Source of the DNA: Selaginella moellendorffii | Taxonomy: Eukaryota > Plantae > Lycopodiophyta | DNA length: 64,000 nt | Assembly (NCBI RefSeq): GCF_000143415.4 | Contig: NW_003314329.1 | Span: forward strand, 267,421-331,420 | Direction: 5' to 3' | In this document: in pieces, positions 10,595 to 36,660 of the stretch | Layout: each line of letters starts with the position of its first letter | Numbering within the stretch: the first letter of the stretch is position 1 | Made by a program: the position numbers and the translations under genes | Notes under the pieces: model-generated | Told to the model about the DNA's origin: nothing | The model's database searches: none | Seen by the model: only the letters and a program-made list of their open reading frames with translations

Positions 10595-13500
10595 ATGGCG
10601 GCAGATGCCGCGGCCCCGATGGGAGGCCTGTTTCTAAATCCCGAGCATCGATCGTCAAAGGTATGGAAGGATAATGTCAGCACCGATGCTCACGGCACGC
10701 CGTTTGCGAGGAAATCACTGGCGATGGAGGACAATGAGGACGCGGAAGCGCTCATGTGGGCAGCGCTGGAGGAGTTCCCAGCCTACGAGCGCCTCCGCAT
10801 GGTTTTTTTGGACGAGGCGGAGAAGATCCCGGTGGATGTGAGGTACCTGAGCAGGGGTGAGAGGCAGCGGGTGTTGGAGAGCGCGTTTGCCACCACCGAT
10901 CAAGACAATCTCCACCTCTTGCAGCGGCTCAAGGAGCGCCTCCAGAGGTCGGTGTCCATCGATCGATTCTTGGCTGCTGGCTTTCATCTCGGCAGAGGAG
11001 GAGGAGCTCACTGTAGAACTACTGACTTGACAGGGTCCGCATTGCGCTTCCCACGGTGGAGGTTCGCTTCGAGCATCTCCGGATCAGTGCTGATGTTCAC
11101 GTTGGATCGAGAGCTTTACCAAGCCTCACAAACTTCGTGAGGAATTTTGTGGAGGTAACTGGCTTACTTTATCGATTGAGATCAAAGACCGCTCTCTTTT
11201 TTTCTTCTCAGGACATGCTAGTTTCTATGAAGATCATGTCATCGGACAAGAAGGATTTTAAGATTCTCAAGGACGTGAGTGGGGTCATCAAACCCGGAAG
11301 GTGAGCTGCTTCATTTACCTCCATTTCTCTTATCTTGGTGCTGGATTCCTTCCTTGCAGAATGACTCTTTTGCTGGGACCGCCTGGAGCTGGAAAGTCGA
11401 CGTTGCTGGTGGCACTCGCTGGAAAGCTTGAAGCGGATCTGAGGGTGTGTCCTGGTTTGCTTTCTTTTGCGGTAAACTGTCTTTTCTGCTCGCAGGCAAC
11501 CGGTACAATAACTTACAACGGCCATGGCTTCAACGAGTTTGAACCCCTGGGAACTTCTGCGTATATTGGTCAAGAGGACAACCACATTGGAGAGATGACT
11601 GTCCGAGAGACACTGGATTTTTCTGCTCGCTGCCAAGGTGTTGGCTACAAAAACGGTGCGTAGTAGCAAAAACTTTGGCGCTAGATTCTTACTCCTTGGA
11701 TCTTTTCCAGAGATGCTAACCGAGCTAGTCGGCAGAGAGAAGGAGCGACACATTCACCCGGATCCTGAAATTGATGCCTTTATGAAGGTCCGGCCGTCTA
11801 GATTTCAAGGACTAGTCTTTCCACTAAACTTTATGGTTACAGGCAATGGCTGTTAAAGGGAAAAAGCACAGTATGGCTACAGACTACATGATGAAGGTGC
11901 TTGGCTTAGAAGTTTGTGCCGACACTTTGGTGGGGAATGAAATGCTTCGTGGCGTCTCAGGAGGGCAGAAGAAACGCGTGACTACAGGTTACAACACCTT
12001 CGCTTGCTTCATAGTCAAATGCCTCAACCAAGCACAAGAGAACTCAGCAACTTAAGAACGTCTTCCTCACAGGTGAAATGGTTGTGGGGCCGAAAAAGAC
12101 GCTTTTTATGGACGAAATCTCGACCGGGCTCGATAGTTCCACCACGTTTCAAATCGTCAAGTGCGTCAGAAATTTTGTTCATTTGCTAGAAGGGACAGTT
12201 CTGATGGCGCTTCTTCAACCTCCTCCAGAAACGTATGACCTTTTTGACGACGTGTTGCTACTGGCTGAAGGATACGTAGTTTATCTCGGTCCGAGAGAGA
12301 GCATACTACACTTTTTCGAATCGATGGGTTTTAAGTTGCCCCCTCGGAAAGGAGTTGCTGATTTTCTTCAAGAGGTATTGAGTTGCTTTTGGTTCCCTGT
12401 TCTTTTCTTCTAACAGTTTTTCCCTACAGGTAACCTCGAAGAAGGATCAGAAGCAATACTGGGCAGACAAGAGCAGGCCATACCAGTACATTCCAGTCGC
12501 GGTGTTTGCCGAGGCATTCCAAGATTATCAAGCTGGTAAAGACCTTAGCGCGCACCTTGCCACCCCTTATAACAAAGCAGGCAGCCATCCTTCGGCTCTG
12601 TCGAAACGAAAGTATGCAATGTCAAGCTGGGAATTGTTCAAGGCATGCACCCAACGAGAAATCCTCTTGATTTCACGTCACAGATTTCTCTACATTTTTA
12701 AAACTACTCAGGTAAGAGTTCAATTTCTCTCCTCCTCGTGATCTTCTTATTGTTTTCCTTTGTTTCAGGTAGCCATAATGGCAATAATTACGGGCACGTT
12801 GTTCCTTCGAACGACAATAGAGCCGACTAATGAAATCTACGGGAATATGTACCTCGGCTGCTTGTTTTTTGCGCTTATTCATATGATGTTTAATGGCTTC
12901 TCCGAGATGGCCATCACGGTTCATAGGCTTCCTGTCTTCTACAAGCAGAGAGATAATCGCTTCTATCCAGCTTGGGCGTTTTCGTTGCCGAGCTGGTTTC
13001 TAAGAATCCCTTACTCGGTGGTGGAAGCGGTTATATGGTCCTGTATTATATACTATTGCGTAGGCTTCACACCAGAGGCTGACAGGTATTGGCACAACTT
13101 TTCTGTGTTACTTAAGCTGAAAGTTGATGTTTTGTCCCCAGGTTCTTCCGATACATGTTTCTATTAATGCTGATGCATCAAATGGCATTGGCAATCTTTA
13201 GACTGATTGGAGCTCTTGCTAGAGATATGGTGGTAGCAAATACCTTCGGTTCATTCGCTCTTCTTATTGTATTTTTGTTGGGTGGTTTTATTATAGCTAG
13301 AAGTAAGTTTTGGCCTTTCTTTGTTATTTTATTTCGCTGCGCTGGCTAACTGTCTGCTATCACAGATGACATACATCCTTGGTGGATATGGGGGTACTGG
13401 CTTTCGCCTCTCTCTTATTCACAGAATGCCATAGCTGTGAATGAATTTCTCGCTCCTCGATGGAACCAGGTTTAATTTCGTTGAAGCTGAGAGTATTCTA

Positions 13501-21182: not shown

Positions 21183-21200
21183 AAACCCTAATTAGGGTTT
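21183..21200. promoter_or_regulatory. Palindromic pair of telo-boxes (AAACCCTAATTAGGGTTT) in the bidirectional RlmN/COG5 spacer
   Basis: Perfect 18-bp palindrome made of two inverted AAACCCTAA motifs between divergent ATGs. Confidence 0.7.
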
Positions 21201-23876: not shown

Positions 23877-23902
23877 TTTAGGTTTAGGGTTTAGGGTTAG
23901 GG
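23877..23902. promoter_or_regulatory. Telo-box / telomere-like array upstream of RPL9
   Basis: TTTAGG-TTTAGGG-TTTAGGG-TTAGGG about 45 bp before the RPL9 ATG; telo-boxes are typical of plant ribosomal protein promoters. Confidence 0.75.
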
Positions 23903-24814: not shown

Positions 24815-26407
24815 CTAGAGCAGCAGTTTGTTGCTTGGCAGCTCCACCACTTGCTTGAAGTACTTGACCGGTATGGAGCCACTGCTGAAGATCAAGCCAT
24901 TCTCTGACGTGTAGAACTCGATCCTCCTGTCCTTGCGAGCTTTCTGGAAGTTGACGGTGATGAGAACCTCGCTGGAGTTGCGCATGCTACTCGCGATCTC
25001 CGCGTCCGGCACTGCCATCACCAGATACATCGGGTTCGAGCTCGGAGCCGTGAGGCCATTCTTCATGATCTCCTCCAGTTCCTGCTTGGATGTGCCGTAG
25101 ACACAAACCGGGGACTTCTCGATCTTCTGGAACAGCTGCTCGGTCTCACCATCAGGTGGCACTGGTTCCTGGGGTGCTCCGATGTAAAGCGCTCCGGTTT
25201 CGTCCACCATCTTGGCCAACTTTTTAGTCAGCTTGTCCACCGCCTTGATCGCCTCGGCAGCAGTGTGGGAGCTGAGAGGTACACCTGACTTTGTCATGAA
25301 ATCCAGCTCCAGCAGCTCCTTGAGCTTGCAAAAACCGTCGGGTCGCATCTCCAAGTTAGGATGAAGAACTGGCTGACGCAAAACCTTTAGCAGCGCACGG
25401 GCAAGTGCTTTGATCCTCCCTCTTTCACTCGGTTGCTCATTCCTCCCCGTCTCTTTCTTCGCCACCTTTTCCATCTCTTCCACTGGCTCTTCCCGATTCT
25501 TTTCCATCTCTGGAATGAGCCAGCGGACCTTCTTTACCCTCTCTTCCACTGGCTCTTCCCGATCGCTCGCCTTCGTTTCCACTGGCTCGTCCTGATCATT
25601 CACCTTCGTTTCCATCTCTTGGTCACTCACCTTCGTTTCCATCTCTTCCATTTCATCCTGGTCACTCACCTTCGTTTCCATCGCTTCCACCAGATTACTT
25701 ACCTTCGTTTCCATCGCTTCATCCGGATCCACCACATTCGTTTCCTCATCCGGATCCAGATCGACCACATTCTTGTCCTCTATTGGCGGATCATCAACTA
25801 GAACCGTCTCCACCGGCCGAACATTCTTCTCGAGCACCATCTCGAACATCCGCTTCCGATTACCCTTCTTCGCGACCGGGAAGTTCTCGAAAAACCTCGC
25901 ACGGATGGCCGGCCTCACGTCCTCGACTTCGCGCTTGGCAAGACCCTCGAGAAACGGCATAAGATCCAGCAGCACCCGGTCCTTCCGCAGATCAGTCCGA
26001 TTGAACGTTGGGATGATCACAACGTTGTCGGAGTGGCTGTCGTACTTGGAGCACGAATCGTCCACAGCGATCACCTGGTCCATGGGCCATTGCAGGATCC
26101 TCAAGTCCTTGGTCTTGCCATGGATCCCATTGCCGCACGAATCGAGGAAGAACCTGTGCGAGAAGCGGTGCTCATCCGGCTCCAGCGCGTCCAGCACCTT
26201 GTCAGTGACGCCCCGCGAGCGAGTGGTGTAGGGAATCAGCACGAACAGCTCCGCCATGCGCTTGAGAAACGCATCCAGATGAGGGCGCTTGATAGGCGTC
26301 TTGGACTTGCCGGTATCCAGGCGTATCTTCGATGACTCGGGCAGCTTGGAACTCAGCCGAGTCTCACAGACCATCAAGTCCCACACCTCGAAAACCAAGG
26401 CCTTCAT
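24815..26407 (-). CDS. Intronless 530-aa chimera: degenerate FCP1/SCP (NIF, HAD-like) domain + acidic repeat linker + degenerate tRNA 2'-phosphotransferase (Tpt1/KptA) domain
   Basis: N-term: KRPHLDAFL, KVLDALEP, FSHRFFLDSC, KDLRIL, VIAVDDS, DRVLLDLMPFLEGL..VEDVR. C-term: LLKVLRQ, MRPDGFCKLKELL, PVCVYGT, IMKNGL, FYTSENGLIFSSG.IPVKYF. Telo-box AAACCCTAG at 26431. Confidence 0.8.
   Translation of the reverse strand: MKALVFEVWDLMVCETRLSSKLPESSKIRLDTGKSKTPIKRPHLDAFLKRMAELFVLIPYTTRSRGVTDKVLDALEPDEHRFSHRFFLDSCGNGIHGKTKDLRILQWPMDQVIAVDDSCSKYDSHSDNVVIIPTFNRTDLRKDRVLLDLMPFLEGLAKREVEDVRPAIRARFFENFPVAKKGNRKRMFEMVLEKNVRPVETVLVDDPPIEDKNVVDLDPDEETNVVDPDEAMETKVSNLVEAMETKVSDQDEMEEMETKVSDQEMETKVNDQDEPVETKASDREEPVEERVKKVRWLIPEMEKNREEPVEEMEKVAKKETGRNEQPSERGRIKALARALLKVLRQPVLHPNLEMRPDGFCKLKELLELDFMTKSGVPLSSHTAAEAIKAVDKLTKKLAKMVDETGALYIGAPQEPVPPDGETEQLFQKIEKSPVCVYGTSKQELEEIMKNGLTAPSSNPMYLVMAVPDAEIASSMRNSSEVLITVNFQKARKDRRIEFYTSENGLIFSSGSIPVKYFKQVVELPSNKLLL
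25480..25760 (-). repeat. Coding tandem repeat (24-33 bp units, METKVSDQE / EEPVEE)
   Basis: Repeated caccttcgtttccatc and ccactggctcttcccgat units inside the chimeric ORF. Confidence 0.85.
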
Positions 26408-27189
26408 CGCTTCTCCTTCTCCCTCTCCTAAAACCCTAGAGCTGTTTGCTTGGATTGTGCATTTCTATTTCTCTCTTTTTAAAAGGGTCTGTCTTTTAAC
26501 AGAGTTCGAGTTTGTTTCCAGATATGGTTGCCAAGGAAGAAATGCATTAACATTGTCCATGGCGCTCCTTTGCGCTCCTTCCTGTTGTTTCAGTATAGAG
26601 GTCACCAGGTTGCTGCTACGCTACTGGCGATGTATATAAAGCTGGCAGCGACTCTTGGGGCGACTTCCAGCCGATCTAACAGCTTCTCGCCAACTTTGAA
26701 GGCCCGCTTGGTATAGGTAACTATATTCTTCTTGCGATCTGGAGAGGGCTACGTCAAGGCGGAGGGCTACAGCCTCAATTCTAGGATGAACGTGAAAATG
26801 TTATATGCTGGAACGCTCACTCCTTTTCTTCCTTTCTCCCTAAATGGCAATACAAAAAAGTGTTACCTTAGTCAGACCAAATCTCCAGGCAGGAACGTCT
26901 CCCCTCGCTGGCAGGAATGATCCAAAGCAGCCCGATGCTGTGATATTTGAATACGGAACATCGCAAGCTCTCGATCCTTGTCCCCGCTCGTTGTGTAGTG
27001 GAAGTGACTGATGTTGACGAAGATGGATCGGCTTCCTCTGTGGAGACTCTATATGTTGGCAAGCACAGCTGGATCAGCAACACTACCTCAAGGCCATATA
27101 CCAAACTAAACGGTGTAAACCTTTCTCTGTTGTATGATATTTGTGATCTCTATTTGCCCGTTTCCTTGAGGCCAGTACGAACTTGACTT

Positions 27190-30100
27190 TAAGTGTGAAA
27201 CTCCCAACTTCTAACCAAATCAGCCACAACTAAGCCGAGAAAGTGTGATCCACGATCAGACAGGAGGATACGAGGTACTCTATATGAGTATATATAAAGT
27301 TTGCTGTGGTAACTTGATTTGCCGCTGCATAAGAGATTGTCTCAACCCATTTGGTAACACTGTCAGTACCTGCAATGATGTACGCATGACGATTAGAAGC
27401 CAATGGGAAAGGTCCTGCATAATCAAGGCTCCACCTTGAGAATGGCGCCTCCGGTGCAATAGGATGTAGTGGGAGCTTTCCCTTCAGGCAGACGACCTCA
27501 AATCGCTCGCAAGGTTGGCAGCGTTGAACAAAACGAGTACTATCCGCATATAGAGTCAGCCAGAAATACAACACCTTTTTGCTGGTCGTTAGAGCAGCAA
27601 AATGACCACCACAATCATGGACCGCAGCTAGCACCTTCTCTGCTTCCTCTGCGTCAATTCATCGTAACAATGTGCCATCCTCTTGCCGTCGGTACAGAAT
27701 ATCATCCACTAGGAGGAATTTAGCCGCTTGCTGAAAAAGTTGATGTCATTCCCGTTTTGACAAATGCTAGCATGGATCCCCCAATAAATAGCCAGTAAAT
27801 CTTTGTACCAAGCCGTGCAGCACTGGACAAAAGAGCTTAGAGGAAGTTTGTTGACACAATGTGGACCAGTAAAACGTGTTGGTGATAATGAAGGAGATCA
27901 TATAACGGCATTGCCAACGCTGCGTAACCACATATGAACAAGAAACCAATCCCTCCCAAGAACCTTCGTAATTGTGACAAAGTGGACGGTAAGGGACTTG
28001 AGCAAGTTGCTCCACTTTGGGCCGATGCCCCGTGCACTGACAAGGTGCCCCAATAGCCTCCCTTCTGGTACAAAGAACTGGCACTTTTGTGGGTTGAGCT
28101 GGACACGAAAAATTCAACACCATTGAAGAATTTCTCTGCTAGTGCCTGTGGCAAAGTCGTCCATATAGATATGGAGGTAGTGCATTCACCAATCAGAGAA
28201 CCGCAAAAACAGGTCTTAAGTTGATCTTGAGACAAATCGGGATCAAAGCACACCGAGTTAGTGGACAGAACAGGAAAACCCTAATGTCCGTGTGTCGTGT
28301 AACACTCACCCCCAAACCGAAGCCACTCACCAAACTGCATAAGACAGTGGCACCCTGGCCATCCAACATCTCGGGACAGAGGACATGCTAGCTGACCTTC
28401 TCACCAAGCCGTTGGGGCCACATTAGTTTCAGCTCATGTATGTAGTGAAATTGGACTTCAATGTGCTTCAAGAGAGCATGGTGGATGGGGTTTTTGGACA
28501 TGGCAATGCTGCTTCAATTGTCACACCAAGAAGTAGTGGGGCCAACTTGTGCACATCCCAACTCAGCAAATAACCCTCAATCCCAAACCACATCCCTGCT
28601 ACCAGTAGTGAGTGCGATGTACTCTACTTTTCCACTAGAAAGTGCCACCATAGATTGTCACTTGGAGGCCCATGTGATGGCACCTCCTGAGAAGGAAAGG
28701 CAAATGCTAGAAGTCAAGCGATGGCCTTTGTTGTTGGCAAAATTAACATTTGTGTAGCATGTCAATGATGCATCACCCCTTGAATAAGCAATGCTATAGT
28801 CCATAGTGCCCCGGAGGTATCTCACGATACGCTTGGCAGCTTGCCAATGTATGGTGGTTGGTGATGTGTTGTATTGACTCAAAGCAATAGTCACATATGT
28901 GATGTCAGGGCGAGTCATCAAAGCCAAATACATGAGGCAACCAATGAGATGCCGATAGAGAGTCCCAATGGGTAGAGGCTCACCAAACTGCTCAATTGTG
29001 AGTTCAATAACACCAGCGACCATCGGGGTCTTGATAGGGTGGCAATCACACATACCAAACCGATCCAGCAAGACTTTGACTTTACGTCGTTAGCTAAGCA
29101 TGTAGCCACTAGACTCAAGATCACATGTGACTTCAAAGCCAAGAAAGTAAGAAACTTGGCCAAGGTCCTTCATCTAGAATTGCTGGCTGAGAGCAGCGTT
29201 TAGAGCAGCAATGGCATCAGTGTCATCACCCATGATGAGCAAATCATTAACGTAGAGGGCCATAATAAGCATGCTCTCAGCATGACCATTCACATATACA
29301 TTATGATCAGCATGGCAGCGACAAAAGCCCTAAGCAAGTAGGGTGGCATCAAATTTTTGATACCAGAGCTCTGTTTTAGGCCATACAAAACTTTCTGCAA
29401 TTGCCATATAGGGCCACCAGGGGCAGCATCGTCCTCAAAACTAGGAGGTATATGTATATAGGTGTCCTCTTGCAAATCCCTATTCAAAAATGCAATTTTG
29501 ACATCCATATGGTGGACTTGCCATTTGCGAGCAACCACAAGTGCATAAAGAGTATGGACGCTAGCCATTTTTACAACCGGTGAGAATGTTTTATTGTAGT
29601 CAAGGCCATGGACTTGGCAAAAACCACAAACAACAAACTGTGCCTTATAACATACAACTTGAACATCTTTCCCATACTCTTTGGAAAAAATCCATTTTGG
29701 ATCCAAAACACATTGCTGAATCAATTGGAACATAAGTTCTGTTAACCCGAATGGAAGAAACTTCTTCCGCAATGGCTTCCATCCAAGATGGAGCCTCAGG
29801 TCCTGAGACAGCCTCATCATAGGTCATGGGGATGCCGATGTCAAAAAGGCCACAAAAGTCATCAAACTCTGTAGCATTTGCTTTAGCATTTTCCCAGACT
29901 TTCAATAAGGGCCAACGTTCCCAAGGGTGATCAAGAACTGGCATTGGATTAGGCATGCCACAACGTTGACAAGGTGGTGGAGGTGTCTGAGGCTTGTCCT
30001 CAATTGGAGGAGCATCAATTGGTTCAAGCATGTCCAGAAGTGGAGGATTCCCCAATGGAATCTCTAGTGGCAACTCATGAATAAGATTTTGAGGTAGAGG

Positions 30101-33100
30101 TAAGAGTGGACCATTTCCCATAAGTGGGATTAAAGGAACAAGTCGAGTCTTAACAATGAAAAAAGGATCTTGAAGAACCTTTGTATGCATAGGAAAGTCA
30201 TCTTCATTGAACATGACGTCTGTGCTTACAAGAGCTTTGTGAGATGCAAGATCCCACAACTTGTAAGCTTTTCTCTTGATGGTGTTGTCCTGTGTATATC
30301 CCACAAAGATGAATTTTTTACTTTTGGGATTTAGCTTTTTCCGAAGTTGATCAGGGGTATGTGCGTATGCTGCAAAACCGAAGACCCGAAAGTGGGACAC
30401 ATCAGGAGTAGAACCTGTCCAAAATGCCTTAGGGGTTTTTCCATCCAAAGCAGCTGTGGCAAGGTGATTTTGGACATGCATTGCTATGGCTATAGCCTCT
30501 TGGCAAAACATCTTATCAAGATGTGCATTAACTAACAAAGCGTGAGTAATATTGACAAAAGTGCAATTCTTCTTTTTTGCAATACCATTTTGCTGGGGGG
30601 TGTAGTGGGTTGTGGCTTGCAATTGTATACTTATATCACAACAGATGCCCCAAAGCTCATTGTTGAGGTATTCACCACCAGCATCAACTTGAAGAGCTTT
30701 TATCTTTCAACCAAGGAGATTTTCAACATAGGCCTTGTACATTTGAAAAGCAACAACTGCATCATTCTTACACATCAAGAAGTGGATGCATGTTTGACAA
30801 CTATAGTCATCAATGAATGTGATGAAATATCTTGCACCATCGTGACTTGGCATATCCATAGGGTTTCATCTTGAATCCTATCTCTTGTTTCATGGTTTGT
30901 TGGGGATTGTAGATGGGATAGAGTCATCACTAGCTCTACGCTCTAGCGCTACTGAGGTGCGTGATTAGAACCTTTGGGATTCCAAGGCTAGAGGGAGTAT
31001 TGCGATGTGCTTGTCCTTGAATGTTCTCTTTGTTGCCCCATCGATTCCAAAGTCCATTGCGGTAGAGCTCTGGAAGTGGTTGAGCGACACCTACAGCACC
31101 AAGAGTGAAATGGATGTTTTCAACATTCATTTACAAATGGACTCCTTGAGGCTAAAGGAAAATGGCAATATCTAGACTCACACTACCAAGCTCCAAGTTT
31201 TTTTCACACAACTTGTGGCTGCTAGGGCAAAGCACTGTCTCACAGATGAGTAGCAGAGGCTGCGGCTCTACAAGTCTTTGCTAACTAGCTGGAAGAATGC
31301 AGTTGAGAGCTTGCTTCTCCAACCAGGGATGACTTGGGCAGATGCCACGAGGAGTCTTTGCAACATTGAGGCCATGCAAAGCGAGAGAGTGGAAATGTTG
31401 CAGGTTATATGTGCTTCACAGGCTTCTAGTGATGCTAGGGTGGCAAAATCGCATGCAACTGCAAATGCCCAGAGAGGGCAAAATTCCATGGCATCTGGGC
31501 ATGCCAAGCCCAGACTTCCAAGAATTAGTGCACTTGCTGCTTGGAGATGGGCCATTGGGCTTGAGATTGCATTGCTCCAAAGCATGTTAAGCAACTAGCT
31601 ACGGCGGCGAAAGCCAATCTACTTAAGGGTGATGGAATTGCTACAACAAATGAGGCTGTTGAGAAGCTCTACAATGCAGAGGCAATTGTAGCACCAAGCA
31701 GGTGGCTCCTAAACTCTAGTTGTACTAATCTTATGGGCAATAAGAAGAGTCTTTTTGAGTGTTATCATCCGAGCATTGGAAAATGTGGTGTTCATTTAAG
31801 TGACAATACCACTATCCCTGTGGAAGGCATTGGGCAATTTCAGCTCTCACTTGATCATGGGAGGACTATGGCCTTTGATAGTGCTATGCACATTTCCACC
31901 TTGCGACAAAACTTAATGTTTGTCGCTAAGATATGTGATCAAAATGCAGTGGTAGTTTTTGATGCAAAAGGAGTTTCTTTGGTTGACTCTAGCTTTCACA
32001 TACTTGGTACATAGTTGCTTTGTGGGTCATGCATTGGGGAATTCTATGAGATTACTACTGCTGACCAGGTTCAGGCCTTTCAAATTGTAGAGGCAGATTC
32101 TTGTACGGAGCTTTGGCATAAGAGACTTGGTCATGTCTATTACCAATCTCTTCAATAGATGAAATCCCAAGATATTGTTATTTTGTGAAACTTGTGTTTT
32201 AGACAAGCATCACTGCTGGAATTTCTGGCCGAGCAAGCATTGAGCAATTGGACTTTTGGACTTGGTTTATTCTAATCTTTGCAACCCTTCTCCATCAAAC
32301 TCGCGGATGGATGGTTTTCCTTCTATGGCGCTATCCCAGCTCTGTTACCATGAGACAAATCAGGATCAAAGCACACTGCACTAGTGGACAGAACAGGAAA
32401 ACCCTAATGTCCACGTGGCAAAGTGTGTCATATAACAAATCTATTTGAATCTAGTTATAACCTGAGAACCCATCCATAAAACTGTATACTTCCTTTCTGG
32501 CCACTACATCAAGAATAGCATCAACGAATGGAGTTGGGAAGTAATCATGTATAGTCACCTTGTTAAGAGCTCTAAAATCCACACACACTTGTAAGTTTCT
32601 ATTAGCTTTACATCCAGCACAATGGACGAAATCCAATCAGCAACCTCCACTAGATAGATAAAGTTGGATTGAAGTAGTTGTTAAATCTCTTGTTTGATAA
32701 GAGGCTCAAGAACAGGGTTGATCCGGCGAGCTGGTTGTTGAACTGGTATTGCATCAGGCTTGAGTAGAATACGGTGCATGAGGACAGGAGGATCTACTCC
32801 TCTCAAGTTCTTGTAACTCCACGCAAACACGTTCAAAAACTCCTTGAATAAAGCTTCCACAGATTCATGTTCCTCCAAAGACAAATGTGATCTGATAAAT
32901 AGCTGCTTCGACTCTGTGGTGTCATTGGAGAAATCGAGCTGAGTCAAGTATGGGTGGACAGCAATTGCATGGGCCCGGACATGCAAAATATCAACTAGAG
33001 AAGTACTGTCTGAAGTAGATAAAGATGCCTCCTCCAGAGCATTGTCAGCAACCAGCATTCATAAACCTTGCTTGGCCAAAGCGCCTGCAATTGCATTGGA

Positions 33101-35410
33101 TTCATGAGGGATTGCAATGATATCCCATCATTCTAATTGCTGCAGTAGGGAGAACAAGGTGAGAGCTATGAACTCTATATTCTCCTGTAACCTGTCATAT
33201 GAGAAGCTGAGAGTCTGATCGGAGACTCTACCAGCATATACTATGTTGCAAGGCCTTCTGAACTGCTTGAATCACAGTGTGATATTTGACTTCATTTGAG
33301 GATGATGCCATAACAACAGTGGAAAATCATGAGAATAATGTAGACCAACACCGCTCCGATACTTCCTCTGTTCAATACTTTTGAATATGCTCCATCACAA
33401 AACAAATAGCATGACAAGAATGATGAACCTGAGCCTTTCTCCAACAAACAATTAATACCGTTATCCATAGTCGTACCTTTTCAAGCGGTAGTAGAAAGAC
33501 ATAAAATATCTGCACTATGGAGAGAGGATAATGAGTCTGTGATGGCCCTCTGACATCCATATCTGACTCCATCATCCAGCTCTGCAGCACTGCATCCTCA
33601 CTCTCCCTTGTCTCATTGATAAGGAGAATATGGACCAAGTTTGTATGCTCCTGGAAGCTAGAGGTTGTTGAAGTGTCTACCATCCTGGATCAACCATTTC
33701 TATTATACAGTGTTGTGGTGATGCCCCCAGCAGAAATGTCCATTTGTCCATGGTCCCAATATGTGTGTGCCGAGACTCTGTCCAGCCATTCACACCACGA
33801 ATATGATTGTGCCGAATCTGCCTAAGCTCCATTGGGGAAGTCAACCACAAGGATGTCCAGGGGCATCCAAATTCCATTTACATCAACCATCGCATCTTTG
33901 ATGAGTCCTACTGGCTTCACTTGGTGTTGAGTGAATGTCTTGAGAATGACAGCAGTTTGAGCAGCAGAATCCAACTTGAGCTGGCAACAGACGTGTGTAG
34001 GCATGACGTTTGTCAAGGCACGAGACAGGAGAACAAAAGAATGCACCTGGATCAATCTGTCGTGGATGATTGACCACATGAACTCTTGCATGACGTAAAT
34101 TCTTTGTCAAAACCTGTGCCTCATCTCTAGAAGACATAAGTTCATTTAACAACTTCGGAGTGAGCTGAAGGAGTTGAGCCAAAGAGATGGATAGGTGCAA
34201 ACTTTTGAAATCTGCCACCAATGAATATGGTGGAACCTGGCAACTTGTTGAGGAACGACAGTGGACAGCACAGGATCTGCATTAGTTCTGGTCTTCATTG
34301 GTCCAAGAATTTCGGCTGCAACTTTCTTGGAATGAAAAGGTTCTCCAGCTTTAATGTGTTCTATCCTAGTTGTTATAAGCACTTTGACTGTGGACGAAGA
34401 AGTTGGCTCATCAGCAGCCTCTGGTTCCCAAAACAATTCAACCAATGAAATTTTTTTGTCCGTCAACAAACTTAACAAATCCTGAAGATTGGTCCTTGTG
34501 TTTGGATTGAAAGACTGGATGACCTCCCAAGCGAGGTGACATCAACACATCCAAGACATCTGGTTGATCCACTAGATCACATTGTCCCTGTTGATGCTTT
34601 CCAAGGCCCATTCCTTCTGACCAGCCATTCTTCTTAAGCATTTGATACTCCTTGTTGTCACAATGGATGCTGGCTTTCCAATTGACAAATCAACCAGACA
34701 AATTGACTTCTCCATGTGAACGTGATTCACAGCTGAAACAATAGATGATGAACTAGCACTTGAGGTCATTCCCCCTTTCTGTGATGTGGTGGCATGATCT
34801 GGAAGTGTTTGTGGAGGTAGACCTGTGTAGTTGGCAGAGGAGGTAAGGCCAACTATGCTGCTGATGGAAGCCTGTGCTGTTGTTGAACTTGGGTTTCACA
34901 AAACAACGATCCTCTGTGTGTCCAGGTTTCCCGCATAGAAACAGAAAATTGGGGACTGATATGGTGCTGGATACACCATTGGTTGCCAAGCCTGCATACT
35001 TGGTGACAATCCTGGAGCCGGTGGTGGTGGCCACTGAGGGGGATTGTGATAACCAGGAGGCGCAGTAGTCTGATACTCCGATGGGAACCACGTCCTCGAC
35101 CTCGTGGTCTATGGTAACTGTTCACCTGATAAACCAGGGAGAAAAGGACAGCCAGAGAGAGCACTGAGAAAGCAAAACCAGGGAGAAAAGGAAACCAATG
35201 AGAGCACTACTGAAACAAGTGCAAACCAGGGAGAAAGACCAGCGGGAGCTCTAGGGAAACGAATGAGAGAGGGGCTGTGGGCTTATATGAACGAAGAATA
35301 TTGTATATTCTAAGGAGTGAAAACTACCATAGCTCCAGCATGTGTCTTTAGTCTTGAGTGAACTATGTGTGAGATGGAGACAACAAAAATTAGAGTGCTG
35401 CGTCACAAGG
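27190..35410 (-). mobile_element. Degenerate Ty3/Gypsy (Tat-like) retrotransposon, 3'-truncated and interrupted by a Copia element
   Basis: Minus-strand order: putative 5' LTR (about 35130-35410), zinc knuckle CGKPGHTEDRC (~34920), G-patch (~34600), protease IDPGA (~34050), RNase HI-like (~33060-33410), RT DFRALNKVT/FMDGFSGYN (32440-32640, resuming at 28227), integrase HDCGGHF..CQPC..WSLDYAGPF (27230-27634). Many stops and frameshifts. Confidence 0.85.
28228..32437 (-). mobile_element. Ty1/Copia retrotransposon, degenerate, with very short LTRs
   Basis: LTRs at 28228-28304 and 32351-32437 (TG..CA), PBS TGGTAACAGAGC (Met-i-like), PPT GGGGGTGAG, TSD gatct/aatct; integrase YTPQQNG, RT HMDVKIAFL/LYGLKQS, RNase H. 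Confidence 0.9.
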
Positions 35411-36160
35411 GAGGAATTAATCTGGGCCGGCTTATAGTCAAGGAATTTTGAATTTGATCGTTGCAAGGCAAATCTATGTCAATGATGTCAATTAAGGCAC
35501 ATGCCAATGGCTCCCGCCAGGATCTCGTCTCTTCCACCGCTCACTTTGCAGGGGTTCATCGATGATCTCTGCGATCGTGAGTGTCCCGGAGACTAAATTT
35601 GCCCAGATCGGAAATCTGGACCGATACCAGGAACTGTCTCCGAAGATGCCGCGGGAAAAGTTGGGCAGTTAACGGCGTAATTTCAACGCAAATGTATGAA
35701 ATGCGTCGTGAAACCAAAAAAATAAGATGTTTCTGGCGTCTGCATATGCCCATTCTCGTTATCTTGTTTGGTGATGAATTCACGAACTTTGGCAATGGCG
35801 CACAATCCTCCGCTTAATGACCAGCACACAAGCCCGGACGCATCAGCATCCAGCACCGCCAAGTCACAAACGCTGCAAATCTGCCCGGCCACCTCCGGCA
35901 CGAACCGCACAGACCGCAGCAGGGGCACGACACCGCCCGCGTAGATGGGCGTAAACGTTGCTCCCCACACCACAAACGGGTTCCTCTCCGTCGTAGTTGA
36001 TCTTGTTCTCGTCGAGGGGGTTCCTCTCGCACGAGGACCTGCTTCGAATTGGCCACCATCTCACCACTCTCACAGAACCATTAAGCACCGCGATGAAGCT
36101 GGCGAGGCGATTGCTAGACATGAATCCAAACCAGACCGCCAGAGACAATGAGAATTGGAA
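35130..36160. repeat. Segment with an inverted homologous copy at about 53860-54510
   Basis: Shared blocks such as gattaattcctcccttgtgacgcagcac, tttctccctggttttgctttctcagtgct and gaggaacccgtttgtggtgtggggagcaacgtttacgcc. Confidence 0.85.
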
Positions 36161-36660
36161 TGCCCCAAATTTCTCCAGAAAGAGAATATAGACCGATACT
36201 AGGAAGTGTTTCTGGAGATACCAATTGCGTTTTAAAACTTGATCATTAAAATGTATGCTATGTGGGGCAAAACCAATATATCATGAGAAGTAGAAGGATC
36301 CCAAAGCAAAATAGCCTCCTGTGGAAAGCGGTGTTTTCTGCATATCCAAGAAAAACAAAAACTTTGAGAGGCTGTCGTTTCTCTACCTGATAACCTGAAA
36401 TTGGACAAGCTGTCGAAGATGCTGAAGATCGCAGATGAGAAACGACCTCAGTGCTGTCGAAGTTACTTCAGACAGTGAGCATACGCAACAGCTACTGGTA
36501 ACTCATACCAGACGGAGAGTCTGTTGTTGAGTTTGTCTTTCCATCTCAAATTATAATTATTGGTGGTTATCTTATTTAAATTGTAACGAACAAAAACAGT
36601 AAAAAATTTAAAATGTGAATTTTCGTATTAATGCTATTTTATGTTCCAAACTTCAAGCTA

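What the first reader, a model, noticed from the sequence alone, without database searches (positions are those of the whole stretch)
24815..26407. Intronless double-pseudoenzyme fusion: SCP/FCP1-like phosphatase domain + acidic repeats + Tpt1 domain
Seen: an uninterrupted 530-aa ORF among intron-rich genes. The N-terminal domain follows the CTD small phosphatase pattern, but DLDETL is replaced by EVWDLM. The C-terminal domain aligns along its length with plant tRNA 2'-phosphotransferase, but LRH is LRQ, KQRF is KKLA, RANQGH is GAPQEP, HGT is YGT and the GLxxMxR Arg is absent. Known: DxDxT and the Tpt1 Arg-His-Arg-Arg tetrad are essential for catalysis. Inference: a retro- or shuffling-derived chimera kept open despite heavy divergence, possibly a phospho-CTD/RNA-end/NAD-binding adaptor or decoy. 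An upstream telo-box suggests it is expressed. I know of no described protein with this architecture.
Basis: partly seen in the sequence, partly recalled or inferred. Interest (0 to 1): 0.75.

Follow-up and report, generated by a model that had tools for sequence, protein, structure and literature searches.

The report
Dead phosphatase–dead Tpt1 fusion gene
The spikemoss Selaginella moellendorffii carries a one-of-a-kind gene that joins a small-CTD-phosphatase-like domain to a tRNA 2'-phosphotransferase-like domain; both have lost their catalytic residues, the gene is kept open in both haplotypes, and it evolves almost as fast as neutral DNA, so it is a curiosity of gene birth or decay with no demonstrated function.

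Summary
Window 24815-26407 (-) is an uninterrupted 530-codon ORF of Selaginella moellendorffii. It has a NIF/FCP1-homology domain (Pfam E 1.6e-27), a polymorphic acidic repeat linker and a Tpt1/KptA domain (E 1.3e-28).

- **Folds:** both domains model confidently (pLDDT 87) onto Scp1/Tim50 and Tpt1 structures.
- **Catalytic residues:** motif I DxDxT reads E-V-W-D-L. The Tpt1 Arg-His-Arg-Arg tetrad keeps only the first Arg.
- **Canonical enzyme:** an intact, intron-containing Tpt1 exists elsewhere in the genome.
- **Architecture:** an exhaustive search of 1.84 billion representatives found no other NIF+Tpt1 protein. The protein itself is already in GenBank, RefSeq and UniProt as an uncharacterised entry.
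- **Second haplotype:** it carries a syntenic intact 534-codon allele.
- **Constraint:** allelic dN/dS is 0.54, not significantly below 1. pN is 4 times that of neighbouring genes. The terminal branches are 4-6 times the family median.
- **Long-term maintenance:** a frame this diverged would hold about 24 stops by chance, so it was kept open for a long time.

Best reading: a lineage-restricted chimeric non-catalytic gene under weak constraint. It was probably built from an intronless NIF paralog plus a processed Tpt1 copy. Recent complete loss of constraint cannot be excluded. Expression and function remain untested.

The parts
24815..26407 (-). Complete 530-codon ORF plus stop. It is the allele of RefSeq LOC9662741 and corresponds to GenBank SELMODRAFT_424529.
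25874..26407 (-). NIF / FCP1-homology (small CTD phosphatase-like) domain, residues 1-178. HAD motifs II-IV are kept (T61, K100, D116-D117).
   Evidence: Pfam. PDB sequence hits to SCP1-3, Tim50 and CTDNEP1. AF2 pLDDT 87.4. Foldseek Scp1/Tim50 TM 0.70-0.78.
26375..26389 (-). Degenerate HAD motif I. E7-V-W9-D-L11 stands in place of D-x-D-x-T at the end of strand beta-1.
   Evidence: Alignment. Strand E2-6 in the model. Identical in the other haplotype.
25418..25795 (-). Acidic linker, residues about 205-330. It contains imperfect 27/33-nt tandem repeats (METKVSDQDE-like units) and is length-polymorphic between the haplotypes.
   Evidence: TRF. A 12-bp in-frame indel and 530 vs 534 codons.
24818..25417 (-). 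Tpt1/KptA-like domain, residues 331-530, with both lobes. The tetrad R-H-R-R reads R344-Q345-L397-S457, and HGT reads YGT.
   Evidence: Pfam. Alignments. AF2 pLDDT 86.7. Foldseek human/mouse TRPT1 E 1e-11.
26431..26438 (-). Telo-box (TAGGGTTT on the coding strand) 31 nt upstream of the ATG.
   Evidence: Conserved in L003, and the same motif sits at the RPL9 and COG5/radical-SAM promoters.
25082..25149 (-). 68-nt GT-AG 'intron' of GenBank model EFJ13404.1. It shifts the frame and truncates the Tpt1 domain, giving 450 aa. It is probably a prediction artefact, because Tpt1 homology continues in the unspliced frame to the last residue.
26850..36602 (.). About 9.8 kb of nested retroelement remnants, starting about 440 bp upstream of the ATG. 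Present only in this haplotype. Boundaries are approximate.

Best explanation
This is a real, lineage-restricted chimeric protein-coding gene of Selaginella moellendorffii. Its product cannot work as either of the enzymes it derives from.

Origin (inferred): a copy of the species' intronless small-CTD-phosphatase-like (NIF) gene family became joined to an intron-free, probably processed, copy of the tRNA 2'-phosphotransferase gene. The join is a linker that has since expanded by slippage of an acidic 9-13-aa unit.

Loss of chemistry (shown):
- The NIF half lost the nucleophile and general-acid aspartates.
- The Tpt1 half lost His and two Arg of the essential Arg-His-Arg-Arg tetrad.
- Both folds, and some ligand-contact residues, are retained.
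- An intact canonical Tpt1 elsewhere in the genome does the housekeeping job.

Evolution (shown): the gene evolved 4-6 times faster than its relatives. It stayed open over more than one substitution per site, and both haplotypes keep an intact frame.

Function (inferred): any function is non-catalytic, meaning binding or scaffolding through two folded modules on a flexible acidic tether. Present constraint is weak, with omega about 0.5.
For: - Domains and folds.
- Catalytic residues lost. The tetrad is essential according to PMC10622864.
- Canonical Tpt1 (P0027, XP_002993383.2) has all motifs intact and contains introns.
- The nearest NIF relatives are intronless Selaginella genes.
- The Marchantia Tpt1 domain is split by about 6 introns.
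- A syntenic intact allele lies on a second scaffold.
- Long-term frame maintenance: terminal branches are 2.94 and 1.68 against medians of 0.5 and 0.4, and shuffles give 23.7 expected stops.
- Coding-type composition: GC3 is 0.72, like the neighbouring genes at 0.65-0.86.
- Allelic mismatch density is 1.57% against 2.67% in intergenic DNA, p = 0.048. There are no frame-shifting indels, against 22 indels in 1.3 kb of intergenic DNA.
- The telo-box is conserved at -31.
- NCBI's pipeline calls a full-length protein on the other haplotype.
Against: - Allelic dN/dS of 0.54 is not significantly below 1 (17 nonsynonymous, 9 synonymous; p = 0.10).
- pN is 0.0138. That equals an out-of-frame control ORF (0.0136) and is 4 times the pooled neighbours (0.0032).
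- Each allele carries a change at a family-conserved position. P513L in the other haplotype hits a Pro that is invariant among 9 Tpt1 sequences. A336 in this haplotype stands where homologs have Gly.
- The indel argument weakens under a different neutral proxy. The dead fragment copies show only about 2 indels per about 80 substitutions.
- No ortholog was found outside this species.
- No transcript evidence was obtainable.
- Retroelement DNA sits about 440 bp upstream in this haplotype.
Confidence: 0.55

Rival explanations
1. It is a gene that has recently lost all constraint, an intact-looking pseudogene in the making. The ORF is still open in both haplotypes only because too little time has passed for a stop or frameshift to arise.
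For: - Omega of 0.54 is not distinguishable from 1.
- pN equals the out-of-frame control and is 4 times the neighbours.
- There are replacements at conserved fold positions in both alleles.
- With only 25-26 allelic substitutions, the chance of no new stop is about 0.35 (my estimate, assuming about 4% of random substitutions are nonsense).
- No orthologs were found.
- Several truncated dead copies of the 3' half exist.
Against: - Substitution density is lower than in intergenic DNA (p = 0.048), and synonymous changes are over-represented relative to sites (9 of 26 against 22% expected).
- GC3 and codon-position periodicity are undecayed.
- The promoter motif is conserved.
- The frame survived more than 1 substitution per site on its own branch, so constraint existed for most of its history.
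Confidence: 0.3
2. It is a set of gene fragments captured and moved by a transposable element (Pack-type, Helitron or retroelement transduction). On this reading it is not a host gene.
For: - Partial copies of the Tpt1-like 3' half sit at three or more other loci.
- Retroelement remnants lie upstream in this haplotype.
- The chimeric, intron-free structure is typical of captured fragments.
Against: - The full-length gene sits at the same gene-dense position, between DUF309 and RPL9, in both haplotypes. The retroelement block is absent from the other haplotype.
- No long direct repeats were found in the upstream insertion block, and the ORF's flanks align collinearly with the other haplotype's unique sequence; terminal or inverted repeats immediately flanking the ORF were not searched.
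- The paralog copies cover only the 3' part, and one includes the unique 3' flank. They therefore derive from this locus, not the reverse.
Confidence: 0.07
3. One or both domains are still catalytic through substitute residues. For example, Glu7 could act as nucleophile, or Lys395/Lys396 and Arg476 could replace the lost arginines.
For: - R344, K395/K396, T439, R476 and the SENG motif are retained in the Tpt1 half.
- T61, K100 and D116-D117 are retained in the NIF half.
Against: - Each tetrad residue is individually essential in yeast, E. coli and Runella Tpt1 (PMC10622864).
- The general-acid Asp is a Trp and the motif I Thr is a Leu.
- The accelerated rate and weak constraint are not what a working active site shows.
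Confidence: 0.04
4. It is an assembly or gene-prediction artefact that joins two separate genes.
For: The two public gene models disagree with each other (450 aa and 521 aa), and a third model covers only the Tpt1 half (219 aa).
Against: - A single uninterrupted frame spans both domains in the raw DNA.
- It does so on two independently assembled scaffolds, at 97-98% identity with collinear flanks.
Confidence: 0.01

Closest known systems
Tpt1 / KptA RNA 2'-phosphotransferase (PF01885), e.g. Selaginella XP_002993383.2, human TRPT1 (7YW2/7YW3), yeast Tpt1 (7YW4)
   Same: Full-length homology across both lobes (Pfam 4-177 of 177). The predicted fold matches the solved Tpt1 structures. The first tetrad Arg, the Thr of HGT, the 'SGMR' Arg and the SxNG motif are retained. 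The domain falls among land-plant Tpt1 sequences in the tree.
   Different: His and two Arg of the essential tetrad are replaced by Q345, L397 and S457. NQGH, HGT and NHVHF are degenerate. Identity to any Tpt1 is only 30-38%, on a branch 6 times the median. The domain is intron-free and fused behind a NIF domain.
Small CTD phosphatases (SCP1-3 / plant SSP-type, NIF/FCP1-homology domain, PF03031), nearest being Selaginella P0021/P0153/P0022
   Same: Same fold, including the three-stranded insertion. Motifs II-IV are retained. The closest relatives are intronless genes of the same species (41-43% identity).
   Different: Motif I DxDxT is E-V-W-D-L, so there is no nucleophile or general acid. A C-terminal extension carries an acidic repeat and a Tpt1-like domain.
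Tim50 (mitochondrial presequence receptor), a NIF-fold protein used for binding
   Same: Structural match as good as to Scp1 (TM 0.71-0.78, rmsd 2.2). It is a precedent for a NIF fold used as a peptide-binding module (my knowledge of Tim50, not tested here). UniProt auto-names this protein 'TIM50'.
   Different: There is no transmembrane or presequence-receptor context, and the protein is not orthologous to Tim50. The UniProt name is an automatic transfer.
Arabidopsis CPL1/CPL2: FCP1-homology phosphatase fused to dsRNA-binding motifs
   Same: A plant architecture that couples a CTD-phosphatase-type domain to an RNA-binding module (abstract of PMC3841200).
   Different: CPL1 is an active phosphatase. 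Its RNA module is a dsRBM, not a Tpt1 fold. CPL1 is conserved across plants, whereas this gene is known from one species.

Membership tests
Tpt1/KptA RNA 2'-phosphotransferase | Sequence homology to PF01885 above the gathering score over the whole domain | tested here: met
   100.6 bits against 26, profile 4-177 of 177
Tpt1/KptA RNA 2'-phosphotransferase | Two-lobe Tpt1 fold (RNA lobe plus NAD+ lobe) | tested here: met
   AF2 pLDDT 86.7. Foldseek ranks human, mouse, bacterial and archaeal Tpt1 structures first, E 1e-11 to 1e-6.
Tpt1/KptA RNA 2'-phosphotransferase | [quoted passage not shown] | tested here: not met
   The tetrad reads R344-Q345-L397-S457, so only the first Arg is kept. Essentiality is from PMC10622864.
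Tpt1/KptA RNA 2'-phosphotransferase | His-Gly-Thr motif contacting the NAD+ adenosine ribose | tested here: inconclusive
   The motif reads Y437-G-T439. The Thr is kept, and single His-Ala mutants are tolerated in yeast according to PMC10622864.
Tpt1/KptA RNA 2'-phosphotransferase | NAD+-dependent removal of RNA 2'-phosphate / complementation of yeast tpt1-delta | not testable with these tools
   Needs a biochemical or genetic assay.
NIF / FCP1-homology (SCP-type) phosphatase | Sequence homology to PF03031 above the gathering score | tested here: met
   96.6 bits against 21.8. The profile match starts only at position 24 of 160.
NIF / FCP1-homology (SCP-type) phosphatase | HAD-type fold with the SCP insertion | tested here: met
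   AF2 pLDDT 87.4, pTM 0.83. Scp1 TM 0.70/0.77, Tim50 TM 0.71/0.78.
NIF / FCP1-homology (SCP-type) phosphatase | Motif I DxDx(T/V), the nucleophile and general-acid aspartates | tested here: not met
   E7-V-W9-D-L11 after the hydrophobic strand ALVF, in both haplotypes.
NIF / FCP1-homology (SCP-type) phosphatase | Motifs II (Thr), III (Lys) and IV (DD/DN) | tested here: met
   T61, K100 and D116-D117 align with the Scp1 motifs.
Processed (retro-)gene | Lacks the introns of its parent gene | tested here: met
   There are no introns in the Tpt1 half. The Selaginella Tpt1 gene spans 1228 nt for 290 aa, and the Marchantia domain is split about 6 times. The NIF half resembles already intronless paralogs.
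Processed (retro-)gene | Poly(A) remnant and target-site duplication | tested here: inconclusive
   Only an A-rich stretch about 125 nt past the stop. Divergence is too deep for such marks to survive.

The most novel reading that the evidence does not exclude
The protein is a maintained, fast-evolving non-catalytic 'reader'. A Tpt1 fold that still binds an NAD-derived ligand (ADP-ribose or ADP-ribose cyclic phosphate) or a 2'-phosphorylated RNA end is tethered by an acidic linker to a NIF groove that binds a (phospho)peptide, as Tim50 or Scp1 does. This would couple tRNA-splicing or ADP-ribose signals to a protein partner. It would be the first pseudo-Tpt1 and the first double-pseudoenzyme of this kind.
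Probability: 0.08. Interest if true: 0.65.

Novelty: new variant of a known kind. Interest (0 to 1): 0.35.

Why it matters
No catalytically dead Tpt1 homolog turned up in the papers searched here, and I know of none. No NIF+Tpt1 fusion was found among 1.84 billion protein representatives. If the gene proves to be expressed and constrained, it would be a tractable example of two things. One is how a retro-copied housekeeping enzyme and a duplicated phosphatase are welded into a new non-enzymatic protein. The other is what a Tpt1 fold can do without its tetrad. If it proves neutral, it is a clean snapshot of a chimeric gene between birth and death, with the two haplotypes of the reference genome serving as an internal control. 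In either case it does not bear on tRNA splicing in Selaginella, which has its own intact Tpt1.

Tried and rejected
1. **Word-index searches.** I searched with the whole ORF, the Tpt1 part and the NIF part. Only same-species entries were found, and nothing for the NIF part, so no ortholog-based dN/dS was possible.
2. **Exact-product look-ups.** Looking up the 530-aa and 534-aa ORFs in public assemblies, including Logan, found nothing. This is not informative about expression, because a bona fide Selaginella gene cluster (P0021) also lacks Logan members.
3. **Polarising substitutions.** I used the two dead fragment copies. The tree is unrooted and counts are small: 5 synonymous and 7 nonsynonymous on the branch that includes the gene. 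At three sites that can be polarised by family conservation (G438, L452, R476), the fragments changed and the gene did not. That is too few sites to test.
4. **Indel test.** The result against intergenic DNA is formally very significant (6e-11, or 7e-6 after clustering). I discount it for two reasons. Intergenic DNA is low-complexity and indel-prone. The dead coding-like fragments show a far lower indel-to-substitution ratio.
5. **Multi-stretch hits.** I suspected these hits in the exhaustive search were fusions. Pfam shows they are tandem repeats of one domain only.
6. **LTR search.** No long direct repeats were found in the upstream insertion.
7. **Literature searches.** Searches for the locus tag, the architecture and Selaginella CTD phosphatases found nothing on this protein.
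8. **Earlier scan notes.** A search by sequence was blank.
Full report
**What is there.**

Window 24815-26407 (minus strand) is one uninterrupted ORF of 530 codons. There is no earlier in-frame start after the preceding stop. Pfam assigns residues 26-165 to NIF (PF03031, E 1.6e-27). It assigns residues 333-510 to PTS_2-RNA, the Tpt1/KptA family (PF01885, E 1.3e-28), covering profile positions 4-177 of 177.

Sequence searches of the PDB return human SCP1-3, Tim50 and CTDNEP1 for the first half. They return human, mouse and yeast Tpt1 for the second half.

Between the domains lie about 125 residues rich in Asp and Glu. They are built from imperfect 27/33-nt tandem units.

AlphaFold2 models of the two halves, made with 36- and 40-sequence alignments, are confident: pLDDT 86.7 for the Tpt1 half and 87.4 (pTM 0.83) for the NIF half. 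Foldseek ranks Tpt1 structures first for one half (E 1e-11) and Scp1/Tim50 first for the other (TM 0.70-0.78).

**Organism and prior annotation.**

The first 420 residues are identical to GenBank EFJ13404.1, SELMODRAFT_424529 of Selaginella moellendorffii (UniProt D8SQ72). Both Pfam domains are already recorded for that entry. That 450-aa model removes a 68-nt GT-AG segment (25082-25149). This shifts the frame and cuts off the Tpt1 domain. Because Tpt1 homology runs to the last residue of the unspliced frame, I regard that intron as a prediction artefact.

The same 90% cluster holds RefSeq XP_002987040.2 (LOC9662741, 'uncharacterized protein', 521 aa) and a 219-aa model of the Tpt1 half. Both are on another scaffold.

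**Catalytic residues.**

[quoted passage not shown] In addition, NQGH reads PQEP, HGT reads YGT and NHVHF reads NPMYL.

The tetrad is essential in yeast, E. coli and Runella Tpt1. Its residues hold the 2'-PO4 and 3'-PO4 of the junction nucleotide and the AMP phosphate of NAD+ (PMC10622864).

Some Tpt1 residues are retained: the first Arg, T439, the non-essential 'SGMR' Arg (R476) and the SENG motif.

For NIF, the gapless match of the N-terminus to hhhh-D-x-D-x-T gives ALVF-E7-V-W9-D-L11. The nucleophile Asp is therefore Glu, the general-acid Asp is Trp and the Thr is Leu. Motifs II-IV survive (T61, K100, D116-D117). Neither canonical chemistry is possible as known.

**Relatives and uniqueness.**

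The exhaustive HMMER search of 1.84 billion representatives gave 3,476 hits. A protein matching both domains would outrank single-domain hits, yet only this protein's own cluster does so. The multi-stretch hits are tandem repeats of one domain only.

The best NIF relatives are Selaginella's own 'probable C-terminal domain small phosphatase' genes (P0021, P0153, P0022; 41-43% identity). The best Tpt1 relatives are land-plant Tpt1 proteins from Marchantia, Riccia, Victoria, Psilotum and Welwitschia (33-38%).

Selaginella's canonical Tpt1 is P0027 (XP_002993383.2). It has every motif intact and is only 30% identical to the ORF's domain.

In maximum-likelihood trees the ORF's Tpt1 domain sits, unresolved, among land-plant sequences. 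Its terminal branch is 2.94 substitutions per site against a median of 0.5. The NIF domain is nearest the Selaginella paralogs, on a branch of 1.68 against 0.4.

No ortholog from another species appeared in any search. How well other lycophytes are represented in those collections is unknown to me.

**Origin.**

The closest NIF paralog is itself an intronless 600-nt gene. The canonical Selaginella Tpt1 gene spans 1,228 nt for 290 aa, and only its first 101 residues lie in one exon. The Marchantia Tpt1 domain is split by about six introns. The ORF has none of these introns.

The simplest history is a duplicate of an intronless NIF gene joined to a processed Tpt1 copy. The linker then grew by repeat slippage. 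This is inference: no poly(A) remnant or target-site duplication can be expected at this level of divergence.

**Second haplotype and selection.**

L003 (scaffold GL377643.1) is collinear with the window at about 97.8% identity, in the order DUF309 - ORF - RPL9 (convergent) - COG5 - radical SAM. It carries an intact 534-codon allele.

- **dN/dS.** Nei-Gojobori counts are 17 nonsynonymous and 9 synonymous differences, giving dN 0.0139, dS 0.0259 and omega 0.54. The excess of synonymous changes is not significant (p = 0.10).
- **Neighbours.** The same calculation on COG5, RPL9 and radical-SAM exons gives omega 0-0.31. With the ORF17903 exon added, the pooled neighbour pN is 0.0032. An out-of-frame control ORF gives pN 0.0136, equal to the target's 0.0138.
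- **Target vs neighbours.** The target's nonsynonymous rate exceeds the neighbours' (binomial p = 2e-4). Its N:S ratio also differs from theirs (Fisher p = 0.03).
- **Target vs intergenic DNA.** The ORF has fewer mismatches than intergenic DNA (1.57% against 2.67%, p = 0.048). It has a single in-frame 12-bp indel in the repeat, against 22 indels in 1.3 kb of intergenic sequence.
- **Caveat on indels.** I do not lean on the indel contrast. The dead fragment copies of this same sequence show only about 2 indels per about 80 substitutions.
- **Conserved positions.** Both alleles carry a change at a position conserved in the family: P513L in L003 and A336 in the window.

Taken together, present-day constraint is weak at best. 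Long-term constraint on the reading frame is secure. Shuffled sequence of this composition carries 23.7 in-frame stops, and the domains have accumulated well over one substitution per residue on their own branch. GC3 (0.72) and codon-position periodicity match the neighbouring genes.

**Promoter.**

TAGGGTTT lies 31 nt upstream of the ATG in both haplotypes. The same 8-mer marks the RPL9 promoter and the COG5/radical-SAM divergent promoter in this window. The roughly 440 bp upstream are homologous between haplotypes but riddled with indels. Beyond that, this haplotype alone carries about 9.8 kb of retroelement remnants (Integrase_H2C2, RVT_2, SH3_retrovirus).

Expression itself could not be tested. 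Exact-product look-ups found no further contigs.

**Paralogous fragments.**

Two other loci were fetched, and cluster membership (P0156, P0157) points to two further copies. The two fetched loci hold 5'-truncated copies of the Tpt1-like 3' half at 88-90% nucleotide identity.
- L001 covers residues 383-519 and has a 12-bp and a 1-bp deletion.
- L002 covers residues 424-530 plus 195 nt of the 3' flank.

These are annotated as 127-137-aa hypothetical proteins. They already share the degenerate motifs, so loss of catalysis predates them. They have decayed further at conserved residues (G438, L452, R476).

**Verdict.**

The 'double pseudoenzyme fusion' description is correct, and the architecture is unique as far as could be searched. 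The protein is already deposited but uncharacterised. The proposed adaptor or decoy role has no support so far.

I consider a weakly constrained, lineage-restricted non-catalytic gene the most likely state (0.55). An ORF that has recently become neutral is the main rival (0.30).

No spliced model needed joining, because the ORF is continuous and all searches used references to it.

Noticed in passing
L004:3001-3600 (+); proteins P0021, P0153, P0022: Selaginella's own small-CTD-phosphatase-like genes, the nearest relatives of the NIF half, are intronless. They read D-M-N-H-T in motif I, so the general-acid Asp is Asn. They may themselves be atypical or inactive. One lies next to an NB-ARC/LRR gene.
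   Followed up: partly
window 26850-36602: A haplotype-specific block of about 9.8 kb of nested retroelement remnants (Integrase_H2C2, RVT_2, SH3_retrovirus). It has no detectable LTR pair and lies between the DUF309 gene and the ORF. It is absent from scaffold GL377643.1.
   Followed up: partly
L001:9951-10377; L002:9927-10466: Truncated, decayed copies of the Tpt1-like 3' half, annotated as hypothetical proteins (SELMODRAFT_431743, 426290, 404571, 404569). The L002 copy runs 195 nt past the stop, into sequence antisense to the 3' end of RPL9. It therefore came from this locus, by DNA duplication or from a long 3'-UTR transcript.
   Followed up: partly
window 25596-25745 (-); L003 about 10700-10800: Each acidic repeat unit carries a consensus 5' splice site (AAG|GTGAGT). 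The RefSeq model on the other haplotype removes exactly one 39-nt unit as a GT-AG intron. This could be real micro-splicing, or RNA-seq reads from the shorter allele.
   Followed up: no
window 21183-21200 and 23885-23892: Telo-boxes sit at the divergent COG5/radical-SAM promoter (a pair, one on each strand) and just upstream of the RPL9 start. The window has 10 copies of the 8-mer, against about 2 expected for equal base frequencies.
   Followed up: partly
proteins P0006 (780 aa) and P0012 (776 aa): Representatives with four tandem NIF domains or four tandem Tpt1 domains in one predicted protein. They are either merged tandem gene arrays or real multi-domain proteins. Their source organisms were not looked up.
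   Followed up: no
proteins P0008, P0010, P0013, P0020: Liverwort, fern and clubmoss Tpt1 proteins (450-554 aa) carry N-terminal extensions of 250-330 aa (where scanned, P0008, P0010 and P0013 have no Pfam domain there; P0020 was not scanned). The Selaginella and seed-plant enzymes listed are shorter (about 290-345 aa).
   Followed up: no
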